NCBI RefSeq assembly: GCF_031769215.1
Contig: NW_026782237.1
Coordinates: forward strand, 1,116,001 to 1,180,000
Length of the DNA stretch: 64,000 nt
Direction of reading: 5' to 3'
From: Ylistrum balloti
Taxonomy: Eukaryota
Position numbers and translations under genes: made by a program
Notes under the pieces: generated by a model
The model's database searches: none
Seen by the model: the letters and a program-made list of their open reading frames with translations, nothing else
Told to the model about the DNA's origin: nothing
Part shown: piece after piece, positions 1-54,400 of the stretch
Layout: each line of letters begins with the position of its first letter
Position numbering within the stretch: the first letter of the stretch is position 1

Positions 1-1062
1 AGTACACCAGTATGTGCTATTGATCAAACAGTGTCTCACACTGTGACAAGTCAGACTAGGGAGGCAGGATAGTACACCAGTATGTGCTATTGATCAAACA
101 GTGTCTCACACTGTGATGAGTCAGACTAGGGAGGCAGGATAGTACATCAGTATGTGTTATTGTTTGTACAGTGTCTCACACTGTGACGAGTCAGACTAGG
201 GAGGCAGGATAGTACATCAGTATGTGTTATTGTTCATACAGTGTCTCACAGTGTGATGAGTCAGATCAGGGGGCTGGGATAGTCCATCAGTATGTGTTAT
301 TGTTTGTACAGTGTCTCACACTGTGATGAGTCAGACTAGGGAGGCAGGATAGTACATCAGTATGTGTTATTGTTCATACAGTGTCTCACACTGTGACGAG
401 TCAGACTAGGGAGGCAGGATAGTACACCAGTATGTGCTATTGATCAAACAGTGTCTCACACTGTGATGAGTCAGACTAGGGAGGCAGGATAGTACATCAG
501 TATGTGTTATTGTTTGTACAGTGTCTCACACTGTGACGAGTCAGACTAGGGAGGCAGGATAGTACATCAGTATGTGTTATTGTTCATACAGTGTCTCACA
601 GTGTGATGAGTCAGATCAGGGGGCTGGGATAGTCCATCAGTATGTGTTATTGTTTGTACAGTGTCTCACACTGTGATGAGTCAGACTAGGGAGGCAGGAT
701 AGTACATCAGTATGTGTTATTGTTCATACAGTGTCTCACACTGTGACGAGTCAGACTAGGGAGGCAGGATAGTACATCAGTATGTGTTATTGTTCGTACA
801 GTGTCTCACACCGTGATGAGTCAGATCAGGGGGCTGGGATAGTCCATCAGTATGTGTTATTGTTCGTACAATGTCTCACACTGTGATGAGTCAGATCAGG
901 GAGCCGGGATAGTCCATCAGTATGTGTTATTGTTTGTACAGTGTCTCACACTGTGATGAGTCACACTTGGGAGGCAGGATAGTACATCAGTATGTGTTAT
1001 TGTTCGTACAGTGTCTCACACTGATCGATGAGTCGGACCAGGGGGCCGGGATGGTACACCAG
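1..1062 (-). repeat. 70-bp minisatellite (~15 copies, runs off window start) derived from the LINS1 CDS end and stop codon
   Basis: Period 70 (agtacaccag at 1, 71, 421). The terminal 72-bp copy (991-1062) is the last 21 LINS1 codons + TAA + 6 nt. Block 71-420 is repeated at 421-770. Confidence 0.95.
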
Positions 1063-6608: not shown

Positions 6609-8569
6609 CAGAGCTTGCAGAGGTTTTAATTTGCAGTTGCGTTTGTCTCCCTTCCATCTGTCCAAGTTTTTGGTAATTAAAATGTACCTGATCACTACAA
6701 ACTTCAAGATTTGACAATTTTATTAATGACACACTGCTCTATAGACAAAAACATTGCTTATTTCGAGATGGTGCGGACATAATTTTGGTGTTTTGGTGGA
6801 TCTTCATAATGGTGTTTCTTCTGGTTGTTTCCCGTGTTTGAAGATGAACCAAATCTGGCAAGTAGTCTGCTGGAAAGTTCATCACTCAAAGGAAACAGTT
6901 ATATCTGTATTTTCTCTTAAGTATGCAATTTATTCTTTCGTTGCCAGTTAGTTATCTTCCTTAGTTAGGTAAGAACAGTTGGAAACATTCCCTTCAGTTA
7001 AGATCACTTTCACCGAAACTTACTGAATGCTAGCAGACTTTTTGAAGGTATCAACTAAGTAGACGATTCTGGTATCTCCAGGTACTGAATTGATGGTGAT
7101 GTCTTGATCTCCTACGTGTGAAATAGCTAGATTTGCTTTGGTGCAGATAGGTCATTTCAAGAGAGAGAGTTATCAATTCTATTTGTGTGAAGCCCTCCTT
7201 TTCCACAAAATCTACAAATATAAAATTGTTCCTTTACATAATCAAAATCCTTTGTAATATTTATGTGAATGGAAAGATAAAATTATATTTATGTATTGTT
7301 ATAGTAAAATGATATGTGAATGTTTTCTACCGAAAGCTTATGTTTGTTAGCTATAGCACAACACTGGTTAGGTGATAACGTGGTAACCTAGGATTGGAAA
7401 GGATACAACCACAAACAATAATTATTGAATTAAAAAACGATAACTGATACGACATACCTGCAGTGTTAATCAAGGAGGTGACAATATGTGATAGATTTGG
7501 TTAACATTTAGGTAGTCTTCTGTAAGATTTGGGTAGATTGTCACTCCCATATTATCTGTTCATAAATTCTACTATACTTAATGATATGTTGGGAAAATTG
7601 GCTGAGCATTTATGACTGTTACCAGGATAAAGACAAAGAATAAGGCCTATTATATAATAGTTCTCACTTATTAATTGACTATTATTTCCTGATGGCTACA
7701 ACATTACATGTATATTTTACAATTTTGGAAGATCTATTGGAACAGAAAAGCCCTCTCCACTCAGTGTTCATGGGAATCATCAGGAGGAAAGCCACAAATT
7801 TGTGTATAATATGCAAACTAGCCTATTATATATACGTCCATTGGGATATGGTTTTGTTACTAAAAATAGTCAATATCACTTAAAATTTTGCTTTTTCAAT
7901 GATTGCCCATGTAACATTTATAAAGTCATGAAACGTCATACAAGTGCTAGAATAAAAGCTGGAAAGTACCAGAAATAGATGCAATACTCGCATCCTATAT
8001 TGCCTTTGTAACGATGGTATAGCTACAATCACAGCGACCGTTACATCTAGTTTCTAAGTAGCCAGCACTTTCAGTAAGCATCTCTTTGTAAAAAAATTAC
8101 CTATCTTGTCATAAGTTAATATGAGTGTGAATTATATATTACAAAAGTTACTGTTAAATGATTTTGGTGATTTATAGTAACACATCCATACCTCAGTTGG
8201 CATACAGTGTAATGGGCCAGGTTGCTTAGTATATGCAAATTTGTGATTTTCCCTGACCTGTTTATCTTAGAATAATTATTCCCAATGGAATATTCACATA
8301 CCGGTATATATGTACACTGACCAAAATATTATGAGCTATATGTTGTTCCTAGAAAACAAAATATAATGTTTACGATGTAGTTTGTTAATTGTAGAGTTTT
8401 TAATGAGAATGAGCTACCAAAGAATCCCAGTGAATGAATGTATTTTAAGAATGTTCTTGTCTGTATTATCTTTCAGATTGATGTGAAACTGGATGTGCTG
8501 AAGTAAGGCTTGTTTTGCTTAAACGGGAGGAAGCTTGTTTCTCCAAATTCAAGCAAGTTAAATACCAAA

Positions 8570-11500
8570 ATGAGTACCAAGCTGGAAGATGAAGAAACCC
8601 AGTATAATGTAGTGAGGGAAGGGAAGGCTGACATACTCCAGCCTAAATCTGTGTTCTACAATCCTGTACAGGAGTTCAACAGAGATCTCACTGTAGCCGT
8701 TATATCAAACTTTGCTCAATTACTTCGAGAAGAAATAAAAAATGATACTTCAAAAAACAAAAGGCATTTAAAACCCAAAAATGATAAGAAATGGCCAGAT
8801 ACGAGTGGGGAAGTTGTACAAAAAACTGATGTGAAGGAATCAGAAGAGCAGACCTGTGATGGTGATGTAGAAGCTGGCAAGAAGTATGCTGATGGTATAT
8901 CAATCTTGGAAGGCCTAGCAGCATCTGGGCTGCGGTCCATCAGGTTTGGGTTGGAAATTCCAGGTGTTCAAAGGATTGTCACCAATGATTTTGATAAAAC
9001 TGCTGTAGAAGTTATACAAAAAAATATAGAGAGAAATAAACTTGAACACCTTGTCACTTCTAGCTTAGGAGATGCTTCTATGGTAATGTACATGAGTAAA
9101 GGAACAGATGCTGCATTTGATGTGATTGACCTTGACCCTTATGGAGGTGCATCCCAGTTTCTTGATGCTGCAGTGCAGTCTGTTGGTGAAGGAGGTTTAC
9201 TGTGTGTCACATGTACAGACATGGCACTTCTTTGTGGAAACACACCAGAAAGTTGTCGGGCAAGATATGGAACTATGTCATACAGATCGGCTTACTGTAA
9301 GGAAATGGCACTCCGCATCCTTCTGCAGTCTTTGGAGACGACTGCTAATAGATATTCAAGGTATATTGTGCCAATGATATCTATCAGTGCTGACTTCTAC
9401 ATTCGAGTTTTTGTGAGAGTTTTCACAAGTGCAGCAAAAGTTAAACTCTCATCACTTAAGTTGGCTAACATTTATCACTGCTCAGGTTGTGGGGCTTTTA
9501 CCATTCAGAAGCTGGCTAGAAAAATACCAACAAAAGGTGACAATTTCAAAATGGCTGCAGCACATGGGCCTCCTGTCACAGAGATATGTGAACATTGTGA
9601 ACACAAACACTATGTTGTAGGTCCAGTATGGGCGGACAGACTTCATGACACAGATTTTGTGAAAAAGGTCATCAGTTATGTACAAAAGAAGTCATCTGAC
9701 TTTCAGACCCACAAGAGAATAGTCGGCATGCTTAGTCTGGTCAGTGAGGAGCTCAAAGATTGTCCCATGTACTATGTCATTGATGATGTGTGTCAACAGG
9801 TTCACCTTTCCTCCTTCAACCAGGAAATATTCATGTAAGGATGATATGATCTTCTGTTTATATTCTTATACAAGGGAGGTTATTTCACACTAATAATTTT
9901 CAGTTTCACAACTGCATAGAATGGGATGTGGTTGCAATTTAAATAGAGAATTTTTCTGTCATGTTTACCTAAACCATAAAAAATGGATTTATCCTAATCA
10001 CCTTGAAGATACAGGGTTGACTGTTGTATGAAAGCTGTAAAAAAAGTTCTTTAATCACATGAAAAAAATCTTAAATGTTCACAAATTTTTCATTGGTAGT
10101 AAGCAATTTTCAAAGTACAGACAGAAACATCGTCAGAGTTCATTTCTGATATCTTGTTAACTTGGTAGGCCATGCCACAACGACAGTTTTTTTTTCTGAG
10201 CAGCAATTTGATTCAACATTTTTTAAAAGAGATATTTCATGTTGTTTTTTCAGAACTTGTATAGAATCTCCTCCATCGGTTTTTAATCAATTTGTTTAAA
10301 CTTGGTAGGGTTTATGCATTATAATTAAAGTTTTATGAATAGCATTTTCAATGATAATTGGAAGAGTGATTGCCCTTTGCATTTTCAGCATTTTAATCTT
10401 TAATCATGTCCATTTTCTCTGTTTTCAACCTGTGTCTTTAAAACTTGTTATAATTAATCACAAAGAAATGCAGCATTGTTGTTCTTCCCATTGTTATATT
10501 CATTTTAATGCAATGTATTTCTCTGTGACATGGAGCAGGTGTATATTGTTCCGACCCGTGGTATTTCTGTCTAAATCATACTATAAATTTGATAATATTT
10601 TAATTTCTAGGTCTGCTTTGTTGAATGCTGGTTTTGAAGTTTCTATGTCTCATGCTGAACAGAATTCCATCAAGACAAATGCATCAAACAGGGATATTTG
10701 GGTAAGATAACATACGTGCAGTTCGGTCATGCAATGAAAAAATAGAACGTCAGAACATTTTGAACTAGGAGTGGTTGTACATAAACTTGAACTCTGAAGT
10801 TGGAATTGTTCTTCTTTCAAAGTTGTGAGATAGTGGCCAGCTTATTGTCACCATCTAACAAATTTGAGGCGTGTCTGAAAGTGTGTATACTATCAAAAAG
10901 GAACAACTACATAATGATTTTAAAAGTTTCATCAAGTAGAAGCTTCATATGATGGGTACAACATATAAATAAATCTTTATTTTCATATCAAATTATGGAA
11001 TAGGTAATGTGTACATTCATTCCATTTTTTAATGTGTTATAAACTCATTAAAACTCGTTAAAATACCTAATCTGCAATATGACATGTTAAGTGTTATCAA
11101 AAATTCTGTATAATGCTGCTGTATGTTTGTCAGAGGTAATGTAGTCAGGGCTCTTGATCTGCCAGATTTGGGGCCGATATTTGGCCCAATTCCCAATGCA
11201 AAATAGTATCTTTTTTTCCCAATTTAGACCCCAAGTGTTGAAAGACACAAGTGTTTACGAGTTTACAAAAGTTAGACCCTGATGACAGGGTCCTATCTGT
11301 TCACCATCATCATCTTTATCACTGTCTTTTTAACTTTATAGGATATTGTCAGGTCATGGGAGAAAACACATCCTGTAACTGAAAAGCGACGTGTACCAGG
11401 ATCAGTAACAGCCAATATCCTGTCCAAGGAGCCAATCCTGAAAGTGTCATTTGATCTCCACCCTGGAGCAAAGCAAGAGTCCAAGAAACGAGGACTGTCA

Positions 11501-12246: not shown

Positions 12247-12319
12247 AGAGACCACACCAGTGAATGGTGTGGCATTGCTGGGGATTATACAACAACTCTT
12301 TCAGAACTTGCACAGTGCG

Positions 12320-13130
12320 GTTGGTGAAGGACTTGTTTAAAAGAAGGCTCCCTGGAGAGACAAATGTGAATTGTGAATGGTGAGGAGCTTGTTACAATAA
12401 AGGTTTCCCATGGAGATAAATGTGAAGTGTGACTGATGAGGGCCTTGTAACAAAAATGTTCCTTAGAGAGAGATATGTGAACTGTGGCTTGTTTCGCTGA
12501 AGGTGGCTTACAGAGATAGATATGAAGTGTGGCTGTTGAGGGACTTGTAACAAAGAAAGCTTCCTAGACAGGTCATTGTAAATGTTACTGTTGAGGGTCT
12601 TGTAACAAAGAAAGCTTACAATACAGGTCATTGTAAATGTGACTGATGAGGGACTTGTAAGACTGAATGTTCCTTAGAGAGAGATATGTGAACTGTGGTT
12701 TGTTTCAGTGAAGGTGGCTTACAGAGATAAACATGAAGTGTGACTAATGAAAGTCTTGTAACAATAAATGGTCCTTAGAGAGAGATATGTGATCTGTGGG
12801 CTTGTTTCAATGAAGGTGCCTTACAGAGATAAATATGAAATGTGACTGGTGAGGGTCTTTTAACACAGAAAGCTTACAATGCAGGTCATTGTATATGTGG
12901 TTGATGAGGGTCTTGCATCAATCCAGATGCCCTTGACAGTTCATTGCAAATGTGGCTGGTGAGGGTCTAACAATGAAAGCTCCCTAGACAGGTCATTGTA
13001 AATGTCATTGTTGTGAGGCTTGTTTAAATGACAATTACCGAAAGAAGTCACTAAGAAGTTTGACTGGTGAGGAGCTTGTAAAGGGCCCCTAGATATGTAG
13101 CTTTTTTTATCACTGGTGAGGTACTTGTAC
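12320..13130 (+). repeat. Degenerate ~50-bp minisatellite with higher-order structure, TRMT1a 3' UTR or flank
   Basis: Recurrent gtgactgatgagggNcttgtaac...acaggtcattgtaaatg. The block ttccttagagagagatatgtgaactgtgg..gaaggtggcttacagagata recurs near 12460, 12670 and 12775. Confidence 0.8.
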
Positions 13131-20504: not shown

Positions 20505-21881
20505 ACTCCATTGTTCTCCACATATATGATATGACAACATCATATGATTAGAGGTCATGTTCTGGTGACACTTGCAACCCTCTGTACTTAACTCGGGGAG
20601 AATGGTCAAATTCACTATCTCGTCTGATACAAGTCATTTTGTTACAACATTGTAAGACCAATGTGATTGAAACTCGGATCCTAAGATGCTCTCCACAAAA
20701 GAGTGAAAAAAGACCCAGCATTTTAAAAGGACATAATGTAACGAAATGCATTAATGCACGTAAAATTGCCACAAATAGGACCATGCAAGATATTTCACCC
20801 ACCTTCATTTACTTTCAAGATTCAGTAGACTGAAAATTATTGAGCTGATTAAATGCATGTCAGATTCTTTGTGGAAAATAACAGTGAGAACTAGGATTTG
20901 CATTTTAATTAGATTGTGTTGTCTTTCCACAAATACTACTTGAATGCTGACCCTGGCAGGGGTCACTGATTTACCTAAGTTATGGTAAGGCTGGCATTCT
21001 AATGTTCATTGTGAACTTATTTTCAAGTTCAAGCAATGGGATTAACCGGTGCAGCTGACATTTTGCATGGAATGGTTCTAATAGCCACAACCAGTGTTAT
21101 ATGGCTACCAACTTGAAGACCTCATTTTAAACTTCTTCTCTACTTGCTTTGATGCCATTGAGCAGAAACTGGTTAGGATATTCAGGAAAGGGTGCTGATA
21201 ATATCTTTTTCTGTATGGCTGCCACAGCAACCATTTTTGTAATATGATTGCACAGTTGTGGCCTTCCTGCACAAAATTAATTGTGAACTTCTCTGAGATT
21301 TAGCAGGAACTTTGAAAGATTCTTTGATGGTCCCTATCACGTTTAGCTGTCCTCAGCTGTAGGTGGCCACTATGGCTGCTGTTTTAATGAAAAAAATAAT
21401 ATCTACCCCAGGTCCAAATGATGCCATTGTTTTGAAAATTTATGGGGATGTTAAGGAAATATGCCAATTTAGAATATAGAGAACTGATAGATAATAAATG
21501 ATTATTAATGTTGATTGTAGAGTAGAAGTGTTCTACCAGACTTTAAATAAGCATTTATGACATGATGTATTTGTGTTAGCCAATAAGCATTACTAAACAA
21601 TTTCAGCATGAGAAAATAAGGGAAGGACAAAGAAGTATGAGAGGAAAAAAGACTGTAAATTTTGCTAAAATGAAAGTTACTTTAGTTGAAATATTTTCAT
21701 GGGTACAACTTCTGTATAAAAATCAACCTTCAGTATACATACCACTATATATCTGGTGCATTCCTTAAAATGATATAACATGGGAATATGATTTTCCTAA
21801 TTCATGACAGAAATTTTAATTTTGATTCAGAGAATATGTTTGTTTTTATTAGCACACAGCAGATTCTACCAGATGTGAACA

Positions 21882-24800
21882 ATGCTGTATCGGGTGATGT
21901 TCAGATGGATGTGTAAGTCGTTACCCAAGAGGAGAGTGCAATGTCTTTGTTTTCACACCAGTTCTAGTGTGAACATAAAAGAATTCAGTGAGGATTCTCG
22001 GTACAGTAAAGTCAACGAGGGAAAGGCAGAAATACTCCACCCAGCTAATGTGTTCTACAATCGAGTTCAGGAGTTTAACAGGGACCTCACTGTGGCTGTA
22101 ATTTCAAACTTTGTTCAAATACGTCAACAGGAGATTAGGCGTAGTAAAGCGCGGAGAAGTGATTGTGTAACTGAGAAACATGTCATAGCAGACGATGATA
22201 TTGAGGTACCAACTGGAAGTACATATGATCATGAGGTTATGGAAGCTGGGAGGAAGTATGCTGATGGTATATCAATTTTGGAAGGCCTAGCAGCATCTGG
22301 GCTGCGGTCAATCAGGTTTGGGTTAGAGATTCCAGGTGTGAAGCGAATTGTCACCAATGATTATGATAAAACTGCTGTAGAAGTTATACAAAAAAACATA
22401 GAGAGAAATAAACTTGAACACCTCGTCACTTCCAGCTTAGGAGATGCTTCTATGGTAATGTACATGAGTAAAGGAACAGATGCTGCATTTGACGTGATTG
22501 ACCTTGACCCTTATGGAGGTGCAACCCCGTTTCTTGATGCTGCAGTGCAGTCTGTTGGAGAAGGAGGTTTACTGTGTGTCACATGTACAGACATGGCACT
22601 TCTTTGTGGAAACACACCAGAAAGTTGTCGGGCAAGATATGGAACTATGTCATACAGATCGGTTTACTGTAAGGAAATGGCACTCCGCATCCTTCTGCAG
22701 TCTCTGGAGACGACTGCTAACAGATATTCAAGGTATATTGTGCCAATGATATCTATCAGTGCTGACTTCTACATTCGAGTTTTTGTGAGAGTTTTCACAA
22801 GTGCAGCAAAAGTTAAACTCTCATCACTTAAGTTGGCTAACATTTATCACTGCTCAGGTTGTGGGGCTTTTACCATTCAGAAGCTGGCTAGAAAATTACA
22901 AACAAAAGGTGACAATTTGCAAATGGCTGCAGCACATGGGCCTCCTGTCACAGAGATATGTGAACATTGTGAACACAAACACTATGTTGTAGGTCCAGTA
23001 TGGGCGGACAGACTTCATGACACAGATTTTGTGAAAAAGGTCATCAGTTATGTACAAAAGAAGTCATCTGACTTTCAGACCCACAAGAGAATAGTCGGCA
23101 TGCTTAGCCTGGTCAGTGAGGAGCTCAAAGATTGTCCCATGTATTATGTCATTGATGATTTGTGCAAGAAAATTCACGTCAGAGAAATGAAGCAGGAATT
23201 ATTTATGTAAGTATTACTAAAAACACCTATAATTTGATGATATTGACTCTTGATGTGTTTTTGATGTGGAATTTGTTATTAATTAACCTCTGCTCCAAAA
23301 AAGGTAACATTTATACTTTTAATGTACCTGTATGGAAGTTAAGTACATTGCCAATAGTACATTCACAAACAAAATTTGATAAGTTGTGTTGTTCTTTATT
23401 TTTTTTTCAAAATTGAACAAAATGCCCATTTCTGTAACTTTTAACTTGAAATACAAAGATGCAGTTGCATAACAACGTATTATATTCATTAGCGCATATG
23501 CACCACTTTTCAGAAATACAAAGTTTAGGTCAGGTGGTGATAAAATCTACATCCCATGTGTCTGAGCAGGTCTTAATCCATGATTCTTAACAATAAAAAT
23601 CAGTTCTTTTCATATATTTCTTGTTCAATCAGCTATGGATTCTGTATAAAAATCACTGTTAAATAAATTTTTCCATTAAATCCATCTCAAGCTTAACATT
23701 CATAAAACTTAATAATTTTAGTTAAAATGACTTTATAATATGGAATAATGTTAGTCCAGAATGGGATTGCCTCTGACCTGGGAACAGTTGTGCTAAAGTT
23801 TTCAATGGTATTATACTTTGGATGCCTTAATTAACTCAGAAATGTTTTTTGAAAATTTTGTTTCAATGGAAATAATCATAAAAAGCTGATAATGTGTCAT
23901 TATTTCAAGGGAGACAATTAAGATGTCATGATGACATGACTTGTGAAAAAAAATGTAAAGATTATTGTTATTAATAATATTTCTGTAAAACCAAGCTTTA
24001 ATTTGTTGCGATATCAATTCTGTTACATGCAGTTGATTTGTGTTGCATCCTATAAGTAGGTCATAGGATATATGTTTGGGATAATTTTTAAAACTTAGAA
24101 GTGTTTTTTTATAGAAAAGGTTCAGTCCAGTTGTTTCTGTATGGCTCTGATTATCTAACAGTTATGTCAGTATTTAATTGTAAGAAACTCTATCTGGTGT
24201 CAAGTTTCTTTTGTTATGTATGCTCACAGAACCTTCCTTATTTCTAGGTCTGCTTTGTTGAATGCTGGTTTTGAAGTTTCCTTGTCTCATGCTGAACAGA
24301 ATTCCATCAAGACAAATGCATCAAACAGGGATATTTGGGTAAGATAACATTGTAGATGTAAATCTATGGAGGGCCACTGAGGCTCACTAGATGTATCTAT
24401 AGTACTATCATTACTTTGACTGGATTTCTGATCAGATCCAAAAGTCAAGTCTGGAAATTTGGGTTTAAGTCAGAGCCAGCAGAGATATTTAGGACTGTAT
24501 TGTTGCATAACAATGGTAACCACAAATATAGAGAGGACATAACTTGAAGTTTGAGGTGGAAATGTCCATTTTCTACTGCATCTACCGGGGTACTTACAAA
24601 ATTGATCATGTGATAAAAAGAATATTAAACTTGTCTCCATTTGATATATGATTTATGGAGCATCATGCATTTTTTATGTACCTCACCAATGACTTACTAA
24701 AATGGAAAATTCATGAGAATTACTTAGCAACAGATACATGACCGTTGGGTTACTTGTTAATTTTGTTCTTATCTTCAGGACATTATTAGATCATGGGAGA

Positions 24801-28438: not shown

Positions 28439-31400
28439 TCATGACTGGTCATTTGTTTCTTCATCTGGCTCATCTGCATTCTCAATTGTTGTACCCAGAA
28501 TTCCCTCTACATCTTCTATTGCACTCTGTAATAGATATACATGGTTGTATCATTTACAAACAAACAGTTAAAGCTTTAGTTTGTTGTTAATTCTCCAAAC
28601 CGTAATATAATTTGTATTGTTTGTTAGTGAGGTATATTTCATCTTGTGTGGATCATGGTTCTCATGTGACCTAAAGAAAGTTTACAGAACTTTAGTAATT
28701 TGATGAAAAAATCTTACTAATAGTCAATACTTTTTGGGAAAAGAACTGGATTTTTTTCCCGTGGAGAGTACAATATTATTAAATAATTACCTTAAAGTTG
28801 GTCTCGCCCTGCATGTTAGGTGCAGAGATTTCCTGGTGGATGACTGACATGTTCCTAGCAAAGGTAGCCAAGGCTCCTTGTAGATTGTCTCCAATAGTCC
28901 TGTCAATGTGATGTAAACAGAATCATCAACAGACAGATCTACTACTATAAGACATAGTTGTTTCTGGTCTTGAAAAAATCAGATCATATTGATGTTGGCA
29001 ATGAATAATCTAGTTATAGACACTACACAAGACTGATCAATGATAAAATATACTTACAACATTCCCAACCGTTCTCTGTTAAAACTGTCTATCAGTGTAA
29101 ATACTGTTCCTTGTTTCTCCTGAAAATAGAAAATAATGCCTTGATTAATAGTAATCTCTCAGCAAATATTGATTAAATCATAAATCAGATGTAAACGAGA
29201 GAGAAACTGCAATCAAATCCTGACGCAATGATAAATCTAGGGTTTACTGTTAGCGATTCAGATATCGACAGTTCATTTTAAGAGTTGACAATTTAACTTG
29301 TCAAATCTGAAGTTTGCATCACTCAAAGCACACAACGTGTCAATAGAAGTGATAACTGTTAAATTTCACTACAAGAAAATGTACTTATGGAAATCAAGGA
29401 ACCACAAAATTTTATTTGAAAAGTTTTGTAATGTTCAATGTACAAAAAAAACCCCAACTAAAACTGATCATGTGTACAATACAGCTGGTACATGTACACA
29501 AATATATGACATAGTGGTACATACTGGTAATCAAAACAAATCAGATGGAAACTGAGAGACCAGTTGTTCATTTTATATTGCTAGATGAAGACTTATCATT
29601 CAAATATGATTAAAACTGAGTAAGTCCAGCTACACTATCAACTGAAGTTATTATAATATGATACTACTGTGTGTACCTTGATATCATAACCAATGCCATG
29701 GGCCCTACACATCTGGAAGAACACGCTGTAGTGGACGACAGCCAGGTTCGTGTGCAGGAGACGGGTACTCATCACTCCAAAGCGACCTGTGTTTGGCTCC
29801 TGCTGTAAAACACAGATAGTGTTAGATAAAGCTGTATATACCAGACGAAAGTGAAATACTAGTATCATTATTATTGGTACATTATCATCTTTTATCACTG
29901 GGTAATTGGATCAGAAAGTAACAGAAAAGCACCGCACAGGAAGTACATTTTTGTACATTAATCAACAGTTACCTCTTCTTCCTGACCCGCAAGTCTTCGT
30001 CTCCTCTGACGTTTCTCTTGCTTGTTCATTGGAACATTGAAGACATGCTTGACTGGGTCGAGAGCACCGTTACTAACATAAGACATAAGCTGGAACATGG
30101 CCAGACTGTCACTATAATGTAGACTCAGATCTAGTGCCCAGAGTCGCTGCTCCATCTGTGGGACAAAAAAGACACATTACAGAGCTGGCATCACAATTAC
30201 TATCAATCTGAGGGATGCAGAAGGACATTACAGAGCTGGCATCACATTTACTATCAATCTGAGGGATACAGAAGGACAACATTACAAAATGGCATCACAA
30301 TTACTATCAATCTGAGGGATACAGAAGGACAACATTACAAAATGGCATCACAATTACTATCAATCTGAGGGATACAGAAGGACAACATTACAGAGCTGGC
30401 ATCACAATTACTATCAATCTGAGGGATACAGAAGGACAACATTACAGAGCTGGCATCACAATTACTATCAATCTGAGGGATACAGAAGGACAACATTACA
30501 GAGCTGGCATCACAATTACTATCAATCTGAGGGATACAGAAGGACAACATTACAGAGCTGGCATCACAATTACTATCAATCTGAGGGATACAGAAGGACA
30601 ACATTACAAAATGGCATCACAATTACTATCAATCTGAGGGATACAGAAGGACAACATTACAAAATGGCATCACAATTACTATCAATCTGAGGGATACAGA
30701 AGGACAACATTACAAAATGGCATCACAATTACTATCAATCTGAGGGATGTAGAAGGACAACATTACAAAATGGCATCACAATTACAATCTAATCCAAGGG
30801 ACACAGATCAACAGGTCATATGTCTGCTGATACTGATTTTGGCACATTTTTTCAACATTTACATCAATATAAACATTTTTTTATACTAATACCCGGTAGG
30901 TAACCTTTTCGGAATAGACAATAAATAAAAGGAAATGTGCTGCAACATTTTGATATTGATAGGTGGTACAGCCATGCAGTGAACAAAAACAGAATTGTTT
31001 TCCAATAGAATACAACAACCATCTAAGACTGACTAGACTTTTAACTGTATCATTCAATAGTAAAATAAAACAAGTTAAACTTACAGATTTAGGGTCAATA
31101 AACGTCACAAAGTCGACAGAGAAGTATCCCAGAATACCCCTGGTTTTGCAGGCCTCTGCAATTTTTTTACAAGCGACACTGAGGACATCTGGTTCAACAG
31201 AGGACTGGGGTACTGACACACCCCAGCAACTGAACGGTGTCTCTGCATGGATCTGGTCACCACAACACACAATGTTGTATTTGCCGTTTGGTTCGATCAT
31301 CATATCCACAGTGAGTGTCGTGATGCTTTCCGACGGTGGACATGCCTCAATCACTCCACCTGAATTAGAGTGAAGTTTTGTTGATTAAGAATACACAAGT

Positions 31401-34400: not shown

Positions 34401-36409
34401 CAAGGGTAAAACCTTTGTTGATAACACATAATTACTGACATGATTCTTTCATCTGAAGTCTAACTTGTTGTATTCAGTATTAAAGTAAATTTATCTCACA
34501 TAAATGATGTTTTACAGTGATTAATGACTGTGACGACATATCTGACCTTTGCCCTGCGTCTGAATGCCTCCAGCTGATCTTCTCGACTCTGTTTGAGTTT
34601 TTGTTTGACTTGTGACATCTTTATATTCATGATCCAGGAAATGGCAATAACACCTGCTGCCCACTTCTTCTTACGATATTCTAGGTATTCAGAACGATCC
34701 CGGAACATCCGCCAAGACGACTGGATACGAGTTGCCGCCACATTTTTTCCATTTGGACCCTTGAATCGTCTTCCCTTAAAAACCAAACAAGAATTGGTAT
34801 GGGATTGTACTAATGAATAATTATGACTTTATGTATTTTGAACGATTGAACTGTTTAACCTGTATAAGTCAACAAACACTTGTACAGTGTTAGAATAATA
34901 TCTACACATGTGAATGTATACTTGTGTGGTATACATTGTACTTGTTGATCAGGAAGTGTTAGGTTGTTTGAGTGACTCAATGCTTGGGTGGAGGTACTTA
35001 CTGGTACAGAAAAGTTGTTGAGTGACTCAATGCTTGGGTGGAGGTACTTACTGGTACAGAAAAGTTGTCCAGTGACTCAATGCTTGGGTGAAGGTACTTA
35101 CTGGTACAGAGAGGGTTTTGAGTGATTCAATGCTTGGGTGGAGGTACTTACTGGTACAGAGAGGGTTTTGAGTGACTCAATGCTTGGGTGGAGGTACTTA
35201 CTGGTACAGAGAGGTTTTTGGGTGACTCAGTGTTTGGGTGGAGGTACTTACTGGTGCAGAGAGGTTTTTGGGTGACTCAATGCTTGGGTGGAGGTACTTA
35301 CTGGTACAGAAAAGTTGTTGAGTGACTCAATGCTTGGGTGAAGGTACTTACTGGTACAGAAAAGTTGTTCAGTGACTCAATGCTTGGGTGAAGGTACTTA
35401 CTGGTACAGAGAGGGTTTTGGGTGACTCAGTGTTTGGGTGGAGGTACTTACTGGTACAGAGAGGTTTTTGGGTGACTCAATGCTTGGGTGGAGGTACTTA
35501 CTGGTACAGAAAAGTTGTTCAGTGATTCAATGCTTGGGTGGAGGTACTTACTGGTACAGAGAGGGTTTTGAGTGACTCAATGCTTGGGTGGAGGTACTTA
35601 CTGGTACAGAGAGGTTTTTGGGTGACTCAGTGTTTGGGTGGAGGTACTTACTGGTACAGAGAGGTTTTTGGGTGACTCAATGCTTGGGTGGAGGTACTTA
35701 CTGGTACAGAAAAGTTGTTCAGTGATTCAATGCTTGGGTGGAGGTACTTACTGGTACAGAGAGGGTTTTGAGTGACTCAATGCTTGGGGGAAGGTACTTA
35801 CTGGTACAGAGAGGGTTTTGAGTGACTCAATGCTTGGGTGGAGGTACTTACTGGTACAGAAAGGTTGTTAGGTGACTCTGTGATTTGGTGGAGGTACTTA
35901 CTGGTACAGAAAGGTTGTTAGGTGACTCTGTGATTTGGTGGAGGTACTTACTGGTACAGAGAGGTTTTTGAGTGACTCTGTGCTTGGGTGTTGGTACTTA
36001 CTGGTACAGAAAGGTTGTTGGGTGACTCTGTGATTTGGTGGAGTTACTTACTGATAAAGAGGTTTTTGAGTGAGTCAGTACTTGAATGGATGTACTTACA
36101 GGTCTGTTCATGATGACCTCTACATCCTCTCGGTTGACAATGACAGCTAGTAAGTCATCCGTACTTGGAGCCCTCTCCAACTCAAACTCCAAGGACAAGT
36201 CAGCAAGTCTGTCAATCACAATGTCAGTGGTAAGACAAAGAGTTGACAAACATTACAGATCTCCAGACTTTAAACCAGTCATATTCACTTGAGGCCATAA
36301 ACCAGTCACGTTCATAGGAAAATTACATCACAAAAAACACCTCATCTCAAGAGATAATAGATTATCATGTATTTTAGGGTATCAAAGACAATACATAATA
36401 ATATGCACT

Positions 36410-42400: not shown

Positions 42401-45400
42401 ACTAAGCTTAAGATTGTTCAACATGACAAGAATTCTCCATCTTTTCTCTGATGAAAATATTGAATAAAATTCATCATTTAAATCAAAATGTAGTAATTAA
42501 GAATCTAAGACATTTTTCATATAATTCAAAGTATCCAGATCTGAAAACTTTTCATCGGTGATTTCAGAATGTGATGATACAGTGAAGAACTGGGCCCACC
42601 GAGTCTCAGCTTTACTGTTAATTATGTGAAAGCACTGAACAACAAGTCACCGTGACATCATTAATCTCACACATATCAATGTCATCTTTCTAACAGTCTT
42701 ACCCCATAATATTGATCCTGAAATTAGTCAATGCTTAACTATCATCTCCGAATTCTAAATCATAAACCTTTCAGCTAATCCGGAGTTTATTTTAAACACT
42801 GACTGAAATAACATTTCTAAAAATCATAATTCTAATTTCATTGAAATGAAAACATCAGTAGGTTACCATTCTTTCTGAAAGATCTTGTTTTACGGAAAAA
42901 GTCTGTTATTTTGTGTGTAATTCCCTCTTGCTCCATAATTAAGGTGATGCGTTTTAAATCATATATGATTTCTATATTTAGAAATAACACTAATTTTTTT
43001 TGAGGAGTTACATACAGTTATCTTACAACAAAATGATTTTTTGAAAATTCATTAAAGATTTATGTAAATAATTGATTACTGTTTATTCTGATTTACTTTT
43101 GTGTTTATTTAAAAGAATTTGAACACCTGTAATATTTTAAGAATAATCTATCTTATTCCTACCAACGATATTTATATCATATCTCACATTACAGCATGCA
43201 GTTAATAAAGATGGCTACACCAATATCAGACTGAGTTTCAAAATTTTAAATATTTACTAGTTAAACCACGCAGTTATATCAATAAAAATGCATGCTATGA
43301 GAACATGATTTTAAAATGAGAAATGAAATTTTGAAAAGTAAATCTCAATATGTACGATATACATACCATTGGCTGTAGTGGTAGATCAAAGGTTTTAAGG
43401 GTGGCTGGTGTTTTTATCTGTGGCATAGATGCTGATGTAGCGCGAGTCTTTGCTGAGGGGGTTCTCGTTTCTGTACTATGGGCAGACAATGGGTGTGGAG
43501 GGACTATGGGTATCCGCGTCACATTATCATCTATTTCTGCTTTCTTTGATGATGTTGTGATGTCTAGTTTGACTCCAGCCAGATGATGGGACATCTCTGT
43601 AACAAATATGTTGTATCTTGGTTAATGAATGATAAAGTCTTCAAACAGAATTAGTGGGCAAAACCATTTTAAAAATTCAGGTGAAATATAGAGTAATTCA
43701 AGTTTTAAAGTCTCAATTTACAGCTAATGTGATATCATAAATGACTTACTTAAAGTTGAACTTTAACCTGAAAAGTTTGCCAGTATTTAATAGTCTTTTG
43801 GTAGATATTGTACCAATGATGTCCTTACTCACCTGGCTGTGCTGGCTTTGTTTTAACATGTGGGTCATGGAGAGGTGCAGTCTTGTGTCTGACTGGTGAA
43901 GGGTCTAAGGTTAGCTCGGCGGCTGGTGGAATCAAACCCCTCTCTAGTAAACTCAGAATCCCCTTCCTAGCATCATCTTCTGATATAGGTGGAGGAGCAA
44001 TCTAAAAGTAGATTTCTCTTTTCAAGACTAAACAAATCAATCTTGGTCCAGGTTGTATCACAATATATATGAGTGACCACAAAATTTATAAAAACATTTA
44101 GTCCTAGCACAATTTTTCCTGTAGCAAAATATTTACTCAGGCCCAGAGCCAGTATGTATAAAAAATATTAAGTCATCTGAGCCAGTATGTATAAAAAAAT
44201 TAAGTCATCTGAGCCAGTATGTAGCACAATATTTAGTCATCTGAGCCAGTATGTAGCACAATATTTAGTCATCTGAGTCAGTATGTAGCAAAATATTTAG
44301 TCATCTGAGTCAGTATGTAGCAAAATATTTAGTCATCTGAGTCAGTATGTAGCACAATATTTAGTCATCTGAGTCAGTATGTAGCACAATATTTAGTCAT
44401 CTGAGCCAGTATGTAGCACAATATTTAGTCATCTGAGTCAGTATGTAGCACAATATTTAGTCATCTGAGTCAGTATGTAGCACAATATTTAGTCATCTGA
44501 GTCAGTATGTAGAACAATATTTATTTACCCTAGGCAAAATGTAGTACAACATGTATTTCTTTATCCTGGTCTAGACATGGCATATATTTACCATGGTCAA
44601 GATTTATTACAATATTTAATTATCCTGGCCAAAATGCGGTATGATGTTTCACTGTGTTAATTGGAATCTATGTCTAGACAATGATACTTCACTATAACTG
44701 TATGCTCATTATAAATACCTGAGGGTCGACTCTGTTAGCCCGTGGAAGGACAGCTAGCGGTTCCACTGTGGTTCCTATGATTGGTCGTGGAATATTCTGT
44801 CATAGAAAACATTGTTATAATTATGATTTATAAGTAATGCATGAAATTCTCCATCCAAGAAGGAGACATCCTATTTCTCACAATGTTTTTTGGTAATACA
44901 TCTGGAAAGTAAGGCTGGCTCACTATACATACAGTATGTTGCGTAGTTTAATTGAATAGAATCAACTCAAAAAGGCAATACAAATAACGCAACAAAAACT
45001 AATTAACTTGTACTTCACAATTTTCATTGTAAAATAAATTCTTATTGATTATGTAAATCATATTCTTTGGAAAAAAAAAATGTAGTACAACATGAATTTC
45101 TAATATAACAAGAGAATTTCTAGACAATAAGCATATATTTGACAAGAGAATTTCTAGTATGACAAGATAATTTCTAGTATGAAGAATTTCTATATGACAA
45201 GAGAATTTCTAATATGACAATGAGGTATGATGTTTCACTGTGACAAGGAATTTCTATGTATGACAAGAGAATTTCTACTATGACAAGAGAACTGTATGAC
45301 AAGAGAATTATAAATGACAAGAGAATTTCTAGTACAATAAGAGAATTTCTAGTATGACAAGAGAATTTCTAGTAATATGAGAATTTCTAGTACAATAAGA

Positions 45401-48400
45401 GAATTTCTAGTATGACAAGAGAATTTCTAGTATGACAAGAGAATTCTAGTATAGAAAACATTATTATAAGTATGATTTATAAGTAATGCATGAAATTCTC
45501 CATCCAAGAAGGAGACATCCTATTTCTCACAATGTTTTTTGGTAATACATCTGGAAAGTAAGGCTGGCTCACTATACATACAGTATGTTGTGTAGTTTAA
45601 TTGAATAGAATCAACTCAAAAAGGCAGTACAAATAACAAAAACTATATTTACTTGTGCTTCACAATTTTCATTATAAAATAAATTCTTATTGATTATGTA
45701 AATCATATTCTTTGGAAAAAAAAAACAAGAAAGTAACAGAATTTCTAATATAACAAGAGAATTTCTAGTACAATAAGAGAATTTCTAGTATGACAAGAGA
45801 ATTTCTAGTATATTAAGATTTGTATATTATCAGTGAAATGCTGTAATAACAAATCTGGTAAAAAGTACAAATATATTACAATGTAATTACAACTAATAAT
45901 TGTTTACACAGAAAATTGCAACACACACAAAATTCTGCTTAGCAAAACCATCTGTCATTGTTCCAAATTAAAGTCACACTGCCATTAAAAAAATAAAAAA
46001 ATTCTATATATATCACAAACAGTCACAACAAACTAAACTCAGCACAGTCACCACATACTTTTGTTAATACTGCTTCTTTCCTGTTATAATATTCAAACCA
46101 TCCACCAAAAACAAATCTCACATGTTTTATGGAGACACAAAACTTATTTTTAATTTTCTTATTTTCTTTCTTTTCCTTTATTCTTCTTTTTAACAATAAA
46201 AGTTAAAATTTCAATGTGTTATCAATATACCAGTTAAAACAAACATAAAGTTTAAGTGAATACATCAGCCAAGTCTATTTTTTATAGTAAAAAACCTTGC
46301 GTTAAACACACAATATACAATCATGAGTAAGCATGTTGTGGTCAGCGGTTAGAGACTTTACTCACATTGGTCACTTTTATGACCACTCCACTATTATCCT
46401 TTTGTATAAGTCTGACCTTTCTCTGAAAATATCGGCAAGTACAGTTTAACAGGGAGAGAAACTTCAAATAGCATTTCCATAAAGATAAAGCAATGTCTAT
46501 TACACATCAATCAATGTAAACACACCAATATATTTTATCTGCAGTGGTGCATTCTACGTACTAGATTTTGTATAACGGTAGAAAAGTACATCTGATGAGA
46601 AAATCTCCATTGACCTCTGTTAAATACCTGTGCACGATCCTAGAATGGTATCCGTCTCATCTTCATTCAGCAAATTATTAATTTTAATCATAATTGTTGA
46701 TGACACAAAAATTCCCACTAACTTTTTGACATTCAAATCATGACTCGCTGAAGTATTTCAAAATCAAATATAAAATCCTAGTTTGTTTGTTACAGTTTTT
46801 ACTATATGTAACAGTAATTCTAAACACTAAAATCAATGATCCACAAGACTCCTCCTTGTCTTAACCCACATTTTCATTAAAACAGAAAATCTTATGAATA
46901 AAACATGTTTCTTGACTACAACTCCAAAACAAGCTCTGGTAGATGTGAGTATCGTGTCTGCCAGTACTAAGTTTTCTAAAGACAAAAATCACAGGGCACT
47001 AAATCTTACCTGTTTTCTAGCTGTTGAATATGTTTATAAGGAGCAGATCTTGACTTTGTTTTCAGGTGCTTTTTAGGGTTATAAGCCTTGAACTGTTACC
47101 TTGTTTTAAGTTGCTAAAAGGAGGGACTTATATATATATATATACATATATTGTTTTCATTAATTAGGGATCACTAACCAATCACCTGGCCCAATAGACC
47201 TGAGAGGCAGGGCCTATTTGAGGAAATTTGAGCAAATTCTTTAAAATCTTCTTCAGGAAAGATTAAATTTTGGACAAACTTACTGTGACACGTCCTTGGA
47301 TAAAGGGACCTGAGTTTTGTTAAACTGTTACATCTGAAGCCCTGGAGGTAGACAGGAGTGGGTTGATAGAGGAAATAGCTAAAAATCTTTAAAATTCTTT
47401 AGTTTAGATAAAGCAATCTCAGCAAACTGAGGAAGGTGATCAATACAGGCCCTATGGGCCTCTTGTTTGTTGTAATAACAAGCAGACCTGTCTTGTTTTC
47501 TATTGTTTTAAGGAACAGACCTTCCATACAGCTGGTAATTTTGTTATTTTCTCAGTTTTCTTTTACAATGGCAGAATGATATTTCAACAAATTAAAATTT
47601 TGCAATCGGGATGTTAAAGGACATCTTATATATGTCTTATCATATCATGGATTAAATTTTCACATTCATGTTAACATATATCATCTTCTCAAAAATAACT
47701 GGTTAAAGAATACCTCATTTTTCTTGTTGTTATAAGGAGCAAACCTCCCTGGTTTTCAATCTAGTTTTGTGTGTGTGTTATAAGAATGGCCTTGTTTTCA
47801 GACCTACTTTGTTTTTTCTTCTTACCTATATTGCTTTTTGTTGTTTTTTTTGTATTATAAGATGCAGAACTGCCTTGTATTTTGTTCTTCAAAGAAACTT
47901 TTGTATAAGGGTCAGACTTACCTTGTTTTTTATTGTTAAAACATCCAGACCTACTTTGTATTTTGTTGTTATTATGGTCAGACATACCTTGTTTTCTGTT
48001 CGCTGTGGTATAAGTGGAAGCTGGATACCAAAATTGTCATTGAGAGATTGTCTGTTCTGTCCATGCATTGGGTTCAACACTGCTCTCAGCGTTAACATGT
48101 GTTTTGTCTGACAAAATATGAATTATATGTCTTTAGTTATTCAATTTCTTAAGATGCATTTAAGTCTATAATTTGACACCAATTAATTCAGACAATGAAT
48201 TTGGAACATGAATTTGAACACTGACAGCTTATTTGAAAAAGGACCCAGCAGCCTATTATTCTTCAAGCCCAACAGCTTTGGTTAGCAAGTTTTATTTTAA
48301 ATCTCGAAAAAAAAGTTTGGTAACTATAAGGAAAGTTCCAATAAGATTACCAAAATAAACAAAGGTGTGAGTCTTCTTTGAGGTACCTTTTTTCTATGTA

Positions 48401-51400: not shown

Positions 51401-54400
51401 CTAGCAAATGTAAATGATCGAAGTTCAAGATGGACATCTTTCTGTTTTATTTGTTTTCAAATCAGTCCCAAAAAGAACACTAAAACACTTGCTACCTGAG
51501 GGGGGACCAACTGATGGCATTTGAGATGTGATAATTTGGTGTGTTAAAAACGAAAGATTCACTGAAAAGTTTTCTACCCTGTCTTACCTAAAACCTAGGT
51601 CATACCAACATCATCCTTAACACACAAGGGCAGAAAATCCTTGGTCATACCAACATCATCCTAAACACACACGGGCAGAAAATCCTTGGTCATACCAACA
51701 TCATCCTAAACACACAAGGGCAGAAAACCCTTGGTCATACCAACATCATCCTTAACACACAAGGGCAGAAAATCCTTGGTCATACCAACATCATCCTAAA
51801 CACACACGGGCAGAAAATCCTTGGTCATACCAACATCATCCTTAACACACAAGGGCAGAAAATCCTTGGTCATACCAACATCATCCTTAACACACAAGGG
51901 CAGAAAATCCTTGGTCATACCAACATCATCCTAAACACACACGGGCAGAAAATCCTTGGTCATACCAACATCATCCTAAACACACAAGGGCAGAAAATCC
52001 TTGGTCTTACCAACATCATCCTAAACACACAAGGGCACAAAAACCTTGGTCTTACCAACATCATCCTAAACACACAAGGGCAGAAAAACCCAGGTCTTAC
52101 CAACATCATTCTAAACACACAAGGGCACAAAAACCTTGGTCTTACCAACATCATTCTAAACACATGAGGGCAGAAAAACCTTGGTTTTATTGATGTCATC
52201 CCACACACACAATGAAGACAAAAACTGTCAAGTAATACTGTGCTTTGAATTATATCAATGTATTAACTCTTAATTGGAATGTTAATAAAGGGTATGTGAT
52301 GCTTTTTTGATTTTGTTCTCAGGAGAGTGAAAATTATTGACAAATGTATAGACTTATTTGGAATTTAAATACAATCTATTGCATAATATTATATACCCTT
52401 TTATGGGTATTTGATATAAGCCAATCTGAATATGATTCCTAGCTGTATTCCATTTCCACCTGTGTACACACACTCGGTAATGTGGGCCATCCCCATTGAT
52501 TTTCCTAATCGGGTATAGGATTTTAAAAGTAAAGTGATTTGTAACCTGGGGCTTGTTATTTGTAGATTGCTGAAATAAGTCTGACAGTTAAGGCCACTGT
52601 ATGGGTTCCTAGTGGTATGATACTTAAAAGCTGATCATACCAGTACTTTGTTATATGGCTAAGTACTATATATTGTACACACTTATACCTTTTGTATACT
52701 GCCTACTTTATGAAAAGCTCTTTTGCTTCATGTATACTGTGTGAAACATATGCCTACTATGTGGTACCTTATGTATACTGTTTGACACTTTATGTATACT
52801 GTGTGGTACATACCTTATGTATACTGTGTGATACTATATGTGTATTGTGTGGTACATACCTTATGTATACTGTGTGGTACATACCTTATGTATACTATGT
52901 GGTACATACCTTATGTATACTGTGTGGTACATACCTTATGTATTCTGTGTGATACATACCTTATGTATACTATGTGGTACATACCTTATGTATACTGTGT
53001 GGTACATACCTTATGTATACTATGTGGTACATACCTTATGTATACTGTGTGGTACATACCTTATGTATTCTGTGTGATACTATATGTGTACTGTGTGGTA
53101 CTTTATGTATACTGTGTGGTACTTTATGTATACCATCTGGATCGATGTCTACATTAACATTTCTTTGAGAATAAAGAGACACGTGTATTATAGTTATTTA
53201 TAAACAAACCTATTCACCTATTCAATAATCAGGACATTAATTCAAAGTTCTATTATAAAAGATTATATTAGATCAACCAATAAATGATTTAATTTCGAGG
53301 TTTTAGTACAAACTTATTACAAAATGTTCTCTCTCGAGTATTAATGCATTTCATCCAGTGCTATAGCAGTAGTTTTATGGATAGCTTTGAACTTTTATCT
53401 TGGTTGAACAGGTCTAAGTTTATCTCCTTGTACATTAATATGCTAAAACCTGATAACTTCAAATGCACTTTACTACAACTAGCTAACACTTCCCCATTTC
53501 TGTGGAACTGAATCTGTAAGTGTGCAGTAATGGTGTCCTGCTTGTCTTAAACAAGAACAAAGAGGCATTACATTAGTGGTAGTAAGAACAATTATAAAAA
53601 GTGTAAAACATTTTTGAATATTTTAGCATTAAACATCACAAAACCACTCATCACTTCACTCTCACAACATTTACTCAAAATTTCAGCTCAAATGCAGCAG
53701 AAGTTTAAATCTTTTTTTCAAGATGGCAGTCAGGGCAGCCTCAAAACAGCCACCAAAAAACGACAAGACTCGATCAGCACCATCTTAGGACTATTTCAGG
53801 CAAGTTTGAGCTGAATCCCAAGGGTGGATCTTAGGAAGTTTATTGTAGGTGTTGTTCAGGAAAACCATTATTGTGTAACCATATTACAAAATGGATACCA
53901 TTGCTGATATGTCAAAGTTTTGGCAAGGCTGAAACATAACAACACTTTGCCAGTTTCCTTTCCCAAATCCAAACCAATTTTTAGCTCAATGGTACCAATC
54001 ACACTAGAAAATAAGTTTAAAGTGTGATTTTTAAGATGGCAGCAAGTCATGCTGGCCCACATTAAATTTGGCAAAGACAAAAAGTAACACATCCCTACCA
54101 ACTTTTAGCTCAATGGCACCAGTTAAACTGGACAAGAAGAGCATTCACTTTGTACAGCTGGGTGAATTATCGGACATCCCTCATCTAAGGGATGAGTCTG
54201 TGTTAGGCTTGAGAGGTTGAGCAATAATTGAGCAATTACTGTGGTGTTCAAATAAGTGGCGTAAACATGGAATGTGCTGATAAATTCATGAACGCCATCT
54301 TTTATACCTTAATATACCTACCATGTAACTATTGTTACCAGTGTTATAATACTGGTATATATACACTCATATCCAAGTGCTTAATCAGACTAAGACAATT

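What the first reader, a model, noticed from the sequence alone, without database searches (positions are those of the whole stretch)
8477..8572. Fossil mitochondrial presequence in the TRMT1a 5' UTR, with its ATGs capped by immediate stops
A: tgATGtgaaactggATGtgctgaagt aligns with B coding sequence tgATGttcagatggATGtgtaagt (Met6 and Met10, 12 nt apart in both). In A these read ATG-TGA (8481) and ATG-TGC-TGA (8493), out of frame with the main ATG. The following open codons (..SSKLNTK) still resemble B (..SSSVNIK). The old targeting starts are now minimal uORFs that may tune translation.
Basis: partly seen in the sequence, partly recalled or inferred. Interest (0 to 1): 0.7.

Follow-up and report, generated by a model that had tools for sequence, protein, structure and literature searches.

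The report
Decayed mitochondrial signal in TRMT1 leader
In a scallop with two neighbouring copies of a tRNA-methylating enzyme gene, the stretch just before the first copy's start codon is the broken remnant of the mitochondrial address tag that the second copy still encodes: a tidy but ordinary case of two gene copies dividing an ancestral double job.

Summary
The window is from the scallop Ylistrum balloti and holds two tandem TRMT1 genes: A (ATG 8570) and B (ATG 21882).

The main idea holds. Positions 8477-8569 are a decayed mitochondrial presequence. The proof comes from orthologues, not from A against B. The leader aligns strongly with the Pecten A leader. It also aligns with the Mizuhopecten A orthologue, where the same stretch is still an open 30-codon basic extension. 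A pre-duplication outgroup transcript has the same presequence followed by an internal Met.

- ATG 8493 sits at the ancestral first Met, not at B's Met10.
- ATG-TGA at 8481 lies in ancestral 5' UTR.
- A's main ATG matches the ancestral internal Met, which is GTG (Val30) in B. The SSKLNTK/SSSVNIK match is therefore 12 nt out of register.

A regulatory role for the two tiny uORFs has no support. They are absent from the Pecten and Argopecten leaders and have poor start contexts (T at -3 and +4). Two ATGs in 93 nt is the chance expectation.

No RNA data were available, so 5' UTR status is inferred. This is a new member of a known kind: subfunctionalisation of a dual-targeted gene.

The parts
8462..8476 (+). 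Pyrimidine tract and CAG splice acceptor in front of the leader
   Evidence: The same acceptor, followed by RTTGA, is found in Pecten A (L002 9911|9912) and Mizuhopecten A (L003 9985|9986). Splicing is inferred; there is no RNA evidence.
8477..8569 (+). A leader: decayed mitochondrial presequence (inferred 5' UTR part of the first coding exon)
   Evidence: Shuffle tests: vs Pecten A leader z 6; vs intact Mizuhopecten A presequence global z 3.8, p<0.0005; vs outgroup presequence p 0.0035. Intron-flank controls were not significant or only borderline.
8481..8486 (+). Start-stop uORF (ATG TGA), specific to Ylistrum, in ancestral 5' UTR
   Evidence: It lies 12 nt upstream of the ancestral start position. 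It is absent from Pecten, Mizuhopecten and Argopecten A leaders. Context is T at -3 and T at +4.
8493..8501 (+). Two-codon uORF (ATG TGC TGA) on the ancestral first Met codon
   Evidence: It sits 16 nt after the acceptor. Mizuhopecten A's ATG is at 15 nt, and Pecten A has ATA at 15 nt. All A-orthologue alignments agree.
8504..8506 (+). TAA in frame with the main ATG; blocks any N-terminal extension through this exon
   Evidence: Translation. It aligns with a TAA in the Pecten A leader, so it was probably already present in their common ancestor.
8507..8569 (+). 21 open in-frame codons without ATG; relic of the presequence's C-terminal half
   Evidence: The GRK codons align with the WRR codons of Mizuhopecten A. 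Offsetting indels (-2 and +5 nt) mean part of it is read in a shifted frame.
8570..9834 (+). TRMT1 A first coding exon, starting at the ancestral internal Met
   Evidence: PF02005 E 1e-111. Donor GT at 9835. The annotated protein P0121 starts here.
21854..21881 (+). B leader with its own start-stop ATG TGA at 21873-21878
   Evidence: It shares the 8-mer at 21872-21879 with A's 8480-8487.
21882..21968 (+). B presequence (Met1 to Ser29), intact
   Evidence: The first 33 residues have 7 basic and 0 acidic residues and an amphipathic moment of 0.67. It is conserved in Pecten, Mizuhopecten and Argopecten B.
21969..21971 (+). GTG (Val30) at the site of the ancestral internal ATG
   Evidence: Alignment A2. 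Both this codon and 8570 lie 48 nt before the EGKA codons.
21882..23206 (+). TRMT1 B first coding exon
   Evidence: PF02005 E 1e-110. 100% identical to P0001 of Ylistrum balloti.

Best explanation
The ancestral scallop TRMT1 gene encoded a mitochondrial presequence followed by an internal Met, which is the dual-start layout of yeast Trm1 and of many mollusc TRMT1 genes. After tandem duplication the two copies divided the two products.

Copy B kept the presequence and lost the internal Met (ATG became GTG at 21969). Copy A kept the internal Met (8570), and its presequence decayed into a non-coding leader (8477-8569).

In Ylistrum the ancestral first ATG survives at 8493. Small insertions put a TGA two codons later. 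A TAA shared with Pecten (8504) closes the main frame, and further indels scramble the rest.

The ATG-TGA at 8481 is a younger, lineage-specific ATG in what was already 5' UTR.

Shown here: homology, frame disruption, and the reciprocal state of the two start codons. Inferred: that the leader is transcribed, that the intact presequence imports into mitochondria, and that the two tiny uORFs are nearly harmless leftovers (leaky scanning, rapid termination) rather than regulators.
For: Family and species: PF02005 on both copies; P0001 and P0121 are Ylistrum balloti proteins. There are only two PF02005 loci in the genome.

Orthologue chain:
- Ylistrum A leader vs Pecten A leader, z 6.
- Ylistrum A leader vs the Mizuhopecten A intact presequence, p<0.0005.
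- Mizuhopecten A vs the B presequences, z 4-5.6.
- Ylistrum A leader vs the outgroup presequence, p 0.0035.

Mizuhopecten A (P0124) carries an open 30-residue extension with 5 basic and 0 acidic residues.

Outgroup transcript L006 is sister to all eight scallop copies (98/99). It has a presequence plus an internal Met in one ORF. Oysters, mussels, clams and octopus show the same layout.

Human TRMT1 has an N-terminal MTS and a C-terminal NLS (PMC11139479). Trm1/TRMT1 modify both cytoplasmic and mitochondrial tRNAs (PMC10275265; PMC2115826).
Against: - No RNA data exist for this species in the tools. The only run found is DNA. The exon boundary at 8476|8477 and 5' UTR status therefore rest on conserved splice signals and on other species' gene models.
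- The direct A-versus-B alignment is weak and its register is ambiguous.
- No targeting predictor or localisation data were available. 'Presequence' rests on composition and on family knowledge.
- Leader divergence (73% identity in aligned columns plus many indels) is close to the four-fold-site level (60%), so fine-scale homology statements carry uncertainty.
Confidence: 0.75

Rival explanations
1. One reading: 8481 and 8493 are the counterparts of B Met6 and Met10, perhaps through a short B-to-A gene conversion within Ylistrum.
For: It is the optimal pairwise alignment. The core is 15/19 identical, reached by 0.6% of shuffles. Gene conversion between the copies clearly operates further downstream (97-98% tracts). 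Both the A uATGs and B's Met10 are specific to Ylistrum.
Against: With the A orthologues included, most alignment settings (all of those using A orthologues alone) put 8493 at the first-Met column. Pecten A has ATA and Mizuhopecten A has ATG at the same offset from the shared acceptor. A conversion would have to act about 27 nt out of homologous register. The 3' half of the same alignment is demonstrably 12 nt off.
Confidence: 0.12
2. The two minimal uORFs are selected translational regulators of TRMT1 A, comparable to AUG-stop elements.
For: Both uATGs stop within two codons. The joint probability is about 0.02, given that 8.6% of window ATGs are start-stop and 13.9% stop within two codons. 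AUG-stop elements can stall ribosomes in plants (PMC7503886). B carries the same start-stop motif.
Against: Pecten and Argopecten A leaders have no uATG. Both uATGs have T at -3 and T at +4, against A at -3 for the main ATG. Two ATGs per 93 nt is the window average. There is no unusual RNA structure (z 0.34). The p value is post hoc.
Confidence: 0.1
3. Copy A still makes some mitochondrial enzyme, by non-AUG initiation downstream of the TAA or by an unseen alternative exon.
For: The 21 in-frame codons at 8507-8569 have 4 basic and 0 acidic residues, and they include a TTG.
Against: The amphipathic moment is low (0.40 against 0.67-0.84 for intact presequences). The stretch is not conserved as an open frame of similar sequence in Argopecten, which has stops. 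The annotated A proteins start at 8570.
Confidence: 0.05
4. The leader is an ordinary 5' UTR and its resemblance to a presequence is chance.
For: A-versus-B significance vanishes with wider ranges.
Against: There is significant chained homology to the intact presequences of Mizuhopecten A and of the outgroup. Intron controls were negative or, for the flank beside the Pecten acceptor, only borderline.
Confidence: 0.03

Closest known systems
Dual-targeted Trm1/TRMT1 (yeast TRM1, human TRMT1)
   Same: It is the same enzyme family (PF02005). It has an N-terminal mitochondrial signal ahead of the catalytic domain, and a second in-frame Met gives a form without it. The outgroup and other molluscs show this layout. 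Literature. The two in-frame ATGs of yeast TRM1 are from my own knowledge.
   Different: Here the two products are split between two genes. One gene has turned the signal-coding DNA into a non-coding leader.
Subfunctionalisation of duplicates by subcellular relocalisation (duplication-degeneration-complementation)
   Same: The losses are reciprocal. A lost the upstream start and B lost the internal start. B evolves faster than A.
   Different: The degenerated signal is still recognisable in the leader. One species (Mizuhopecten) retains the intact state in copy A, so the process is caught part-way. The comparison with published cases is from my own knowledge.
Minimal AUG-stop uORFs (Arabidopsis NIP5;1)
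   Same: [quoted passage not shown]
   Different: There is no conservation, the initiation context is weak, and there is no evidence of stalling or regulation. The plant element is ligand-responsive.

Membership tests
TRM1/TRMT1 tRNA (guanine26-N2)-dimethyltransferase | Match to the PF02005 TRM domain above the curated cut-off | tested here: met
   374 and 371 bits against a cut-off of 27. The annotated orthologues carry the family name.
Relic (pseudogenised) mitochondrial presequence | Sequence homology to an intact presequence at the orthologous position | tested here: met
   Shuffle tests against Mizuhopecten A and the outgroup; alignment A2.
Relic (pseudogenised) mitochondrial presequence | Loss of a continuous ORF from the old start to the mature protein | tested here: met
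   8493 is out of frame and stops after two codons. There is an in-frame TAA at 8504.
Relic (pseudogenised) mitochondrial presequence | The intact version actually directs import into mitochondria | not testable with these tools
   Only composition is available: 5-8 basic and 0 acidic residues, amphipathic moment 0.67-0.84. Human TRMT1's MTS is known from the literature.
5' UTR uORF with regulatory function | The uATG lies in the mature mRNA leader | tested here: inconclusive
   The acceptor is conserved and the homologous stretch is annotated exon in Mizuhopecten. No RNA run was found for this species.
5' UTR uORF with regulatory function | Conservation of the uATG across related species | tested here: not met
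   There is no uATG in the Pecten or Argopecten A leaders. In Mizuhopecten the ATG is the CDS start.
5' UTR uORF with regulatory function | Favourable initiation context, or ribosome occupancy | tested here: not met
   Both uATGs have T at -3 and T at +4. Ribosome occupancy is not testable here.
Subfunctionalised duplicate pair (DDC) | The single-copy ancestor carried both functions, and each copy lost a complementary one | tested here: met
   The outgroup has presequence plus internal Met. A lacks a usable upstream start and B has GTG at the internal Met. Only the N-terminal signals were tested here. Localisation itself was not tested.

The most novel reading that the evidence does not exclude
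Both Ylistrum paralogues carry the same 8-nt start-stop motif just upstream of the ancestral start codon (8480-8487 in A, 21872-21879 in B), and their orthologues lack it. If selection or gene conversion maintains this motif, it could be a shared translational brake that co-regulates the nuclear and mitochondrial TRMT1 genes.
Probability: 0.07. Interest if true: 0.5.

Novelty: new member of a known kind. Interest (0 to 1): 0.3.

Why it matters
It gives a sequence-level record of how a dual-targeted gene is split after duplication. The old targeting signal is still readable in one copy's leader. The old first ATG is neutralised in three different ways in three scallops: truncated in Ylistrum, ATA in Pecten, and gone in Argopecten. 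In Mizuhopecten it is still intact. That makes scallop TRMT1 a usable natural series for studying loss of alternative translation starts. It does not change what is known about TRMT1 or about uORFs.

Tried and rejected
- The direct A/B alignment gave three different registers depending on tool and ranges. It was rejected as a basis for codon-level homology.
- RNA evidence: the run search returned no RNA run. The single run laid was DNA contigs of another individual, and its difference list was cut off before 8477.
- Look-ups of P0003 and P0004 found no record. Longer isoforms from the cluster list worked instead.
It was redone from files.
- RNA folding of the leader showed nothing unusual.
- Only first coding exons were searched, by reference.

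Full report
WHAT IS THERE

The window has 35% G+C and no N. It carries two tandem genes whose long first coding exons match the TRM domain PF02005 at E about 1e-110. Copy A has its ATG at 8570 and copy B at 21882.

A word search with B's first exon, given by reference only, returned a 100% identical protein of Ylistrum balloti (P0001). It also returned close relatives in Pecten maximus, Mizuhopecten yessoensis and Argopecten irradians. The cluster list added the annotated A proteins of all four scallops. The genome has only these two PF02005 loci.

THE OBSERVATION

All literal features are present:
- ATG-TGA at 8481 and ATG-TGC-TGA at 8493, both out of frame with 8570.
- A TAA at 8504 in the main frame, followed by 21 open codons.
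- B's Met6 and Met10 ATGs 12 nt apart, like the two A uATGs.

With ranges anchored at the splice acceptors and the conserved EGKA codons it does not (p 0.11-0.28). MAFFT gives other registers. Both leaders repeat GATGTG, and each of two competing registers owns a shared 8-mer. The A/B pair alone cannot settle which base matches which.

ORTHOLOGUES SETTLE THE MAIN QUESTION

I fetched the genomic loci of A and B from the three other scallops.

The A leaders share a CAG acceptor followed by RTTGA. The Ylistrum A leader aligns with:
- the Pecten A leader at z 6;
- the homologous Mizuhopecten A stretch at global z 3.8, p<0.0005.

In Mizuhopecten that stretch is not a leader. It is an open 30-codon extension of the annotated protein P0124, with 5 basic and 0 acidic residues, running into the same Met-Ser start as Ylistrum A. 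That extension aligns with the B presequences at z 4-5.6. Intron flanks used as controls are not significant or only borderline.

A Logan transcript contig (L006, protein P0007) is sister to all eight scallop copies (98/99). It carries a presequence and an internal Met in one ORF. The Ylistrum A leader aligns with its presequence at p 0.0035.

Oysters, mussels, clams and octopus show the same presequence-plus-internal-Met layout.

THE REGISTER

Every alignment built from A orthologues alone, and most of those that add B sequences, puts 8493 within 1 nt of the Mizuhopecten A first Met, which shares its column with B Met1. Counting from the acceptor, the ATG is at 16 nt in Ylistrum and 15 nt in Mizuhopecten. 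Pecten has ATA at 15 nt. So 8493 is the ancestral first start codon. A small insertion after it creates the TGC-TGA.

The TAA at 8504 aligns with a TAA in Pecten A. The ORF was therefore probably already broken in their common ancestor.

8481 lies upstream of the ancestral start and has no counterpart in the other A leaders.

B's Met10 is absent from the other B genes, and the outgroup has a serine codon at Met6. Neither is an old start.

At the 3' end, A's ATG 8570, the outgroup's internal ATG and B's GTG at 21969 share a column. Both 8570 and 21969 lie 48 nt before EGKA. This makes the SSKLNTK/SSSVNIK resemblance 12 nt out of register. It also shows that B lost the internal Met.

FUNCTION OF THE TINY uORFs

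Pecten and Argopecten A leaders contain no ATG at all. This fits purging of upstream starts rather than retention of a regulator.

Both Ylistrum uATGs have T at -3 and +4, whereas the main ATG has A at -3. Two ATGs per 93 nt is the window average. Both stopping within two codons has a post hoc probability near 0.02.

The leader has no unusual fold. Its divergence is near the four-fold-site level.

I read the uORFs as neutralised leftovers that scanning ribosomes mostly skip or leave at once. This step is inferred.

LIMITS

No RNA run exists for this species in the tools. The one holder is DNA from another individual. Exon status therefore rests on conserved splice signals and on other species' models.

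Import into mitochondria rests on composition and on family knowledge: the human TRMT1 MTS and NLS, and Trm1/TRMT1 acting on cytoplasmic and mitochondrial tRNAs.

Whether the loss in Argopecten is shared with Pecten and Ylistrum or is independent is open. The scallop branching order is not resolved by these data.

VERDICT

The leader is a genuine fossil presequence, and the fossil start is 8493. This is subfunctionalisation of a dual-targeted gene, a known kind, documented here in useful detail.

Noticed in passing
window 8870-9792 vs 22242-23164; 10603-10713 vs 24240-24350: A and B are 96.9% and 98.2% identical over these tracts but only 72-79% identical in the flanking exonic parts. This pattern indicates gene conversion between the paralogues. 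The leader and presequence lie outside the tracts.
   Followed up: partly
window 21873-21878: B has its own ATG-TGA start-stop, 3 nt before and in frame with its main ATG. It is absent from Pecten and Mizuhopecten B; Argopecten B has a different uATG. It shares an 8-mer with A's 8480-8487.
   Followed up: partly
L001 and L002 (Pecten maximus LR736846.1): In Pecten the two copies are not tandem. A is near 23.66 Mb beside LINES and cactin. B is near 30.87 Mb on the opposite strand beside IQCH. The copies are tandem in Ylistrum, Argopecten and Mizuhopecten.
   Followed up: no
L002 about 9813-9892: Pecten A has a partial tandem duplicate of the acceptor plus the leader start inside the upstream intron.
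   Followed up: no
L006 456-560: The gene call on the outgroup transcript starts at 561, but the ORF is open from an ATG at 456 and encodes a presequence. The 455 nt further upstream are AT-rich with many short uORFs, possibly retained intron.
   Followed up: partly
window 1-1062, 12307-13081, 30151-30807, 34961-36103, 44120-45830, 51590-52225: There are several long tandem-repeat arrays. The one downstream of A (12307-13081) has counterparts downstream of A in Pecten and Mizuhopecten.
   Followed up: no
window 7256-8935: A DNA contig from another individual differs by 41 substitutions and 39 gap letters over 1.7 kb, including a 25-nt deletion at 7676 and a TCTT insertion at 8424 in the pyrimidine tract. 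Differences inside 8477-8569 were not shown.
   Followed up: no
window 7786-7883 and 8154-8252: There is an inverted repeat (74% identity) in the intron or intergenic DNA just upstream of the leader.
   Followed up: no
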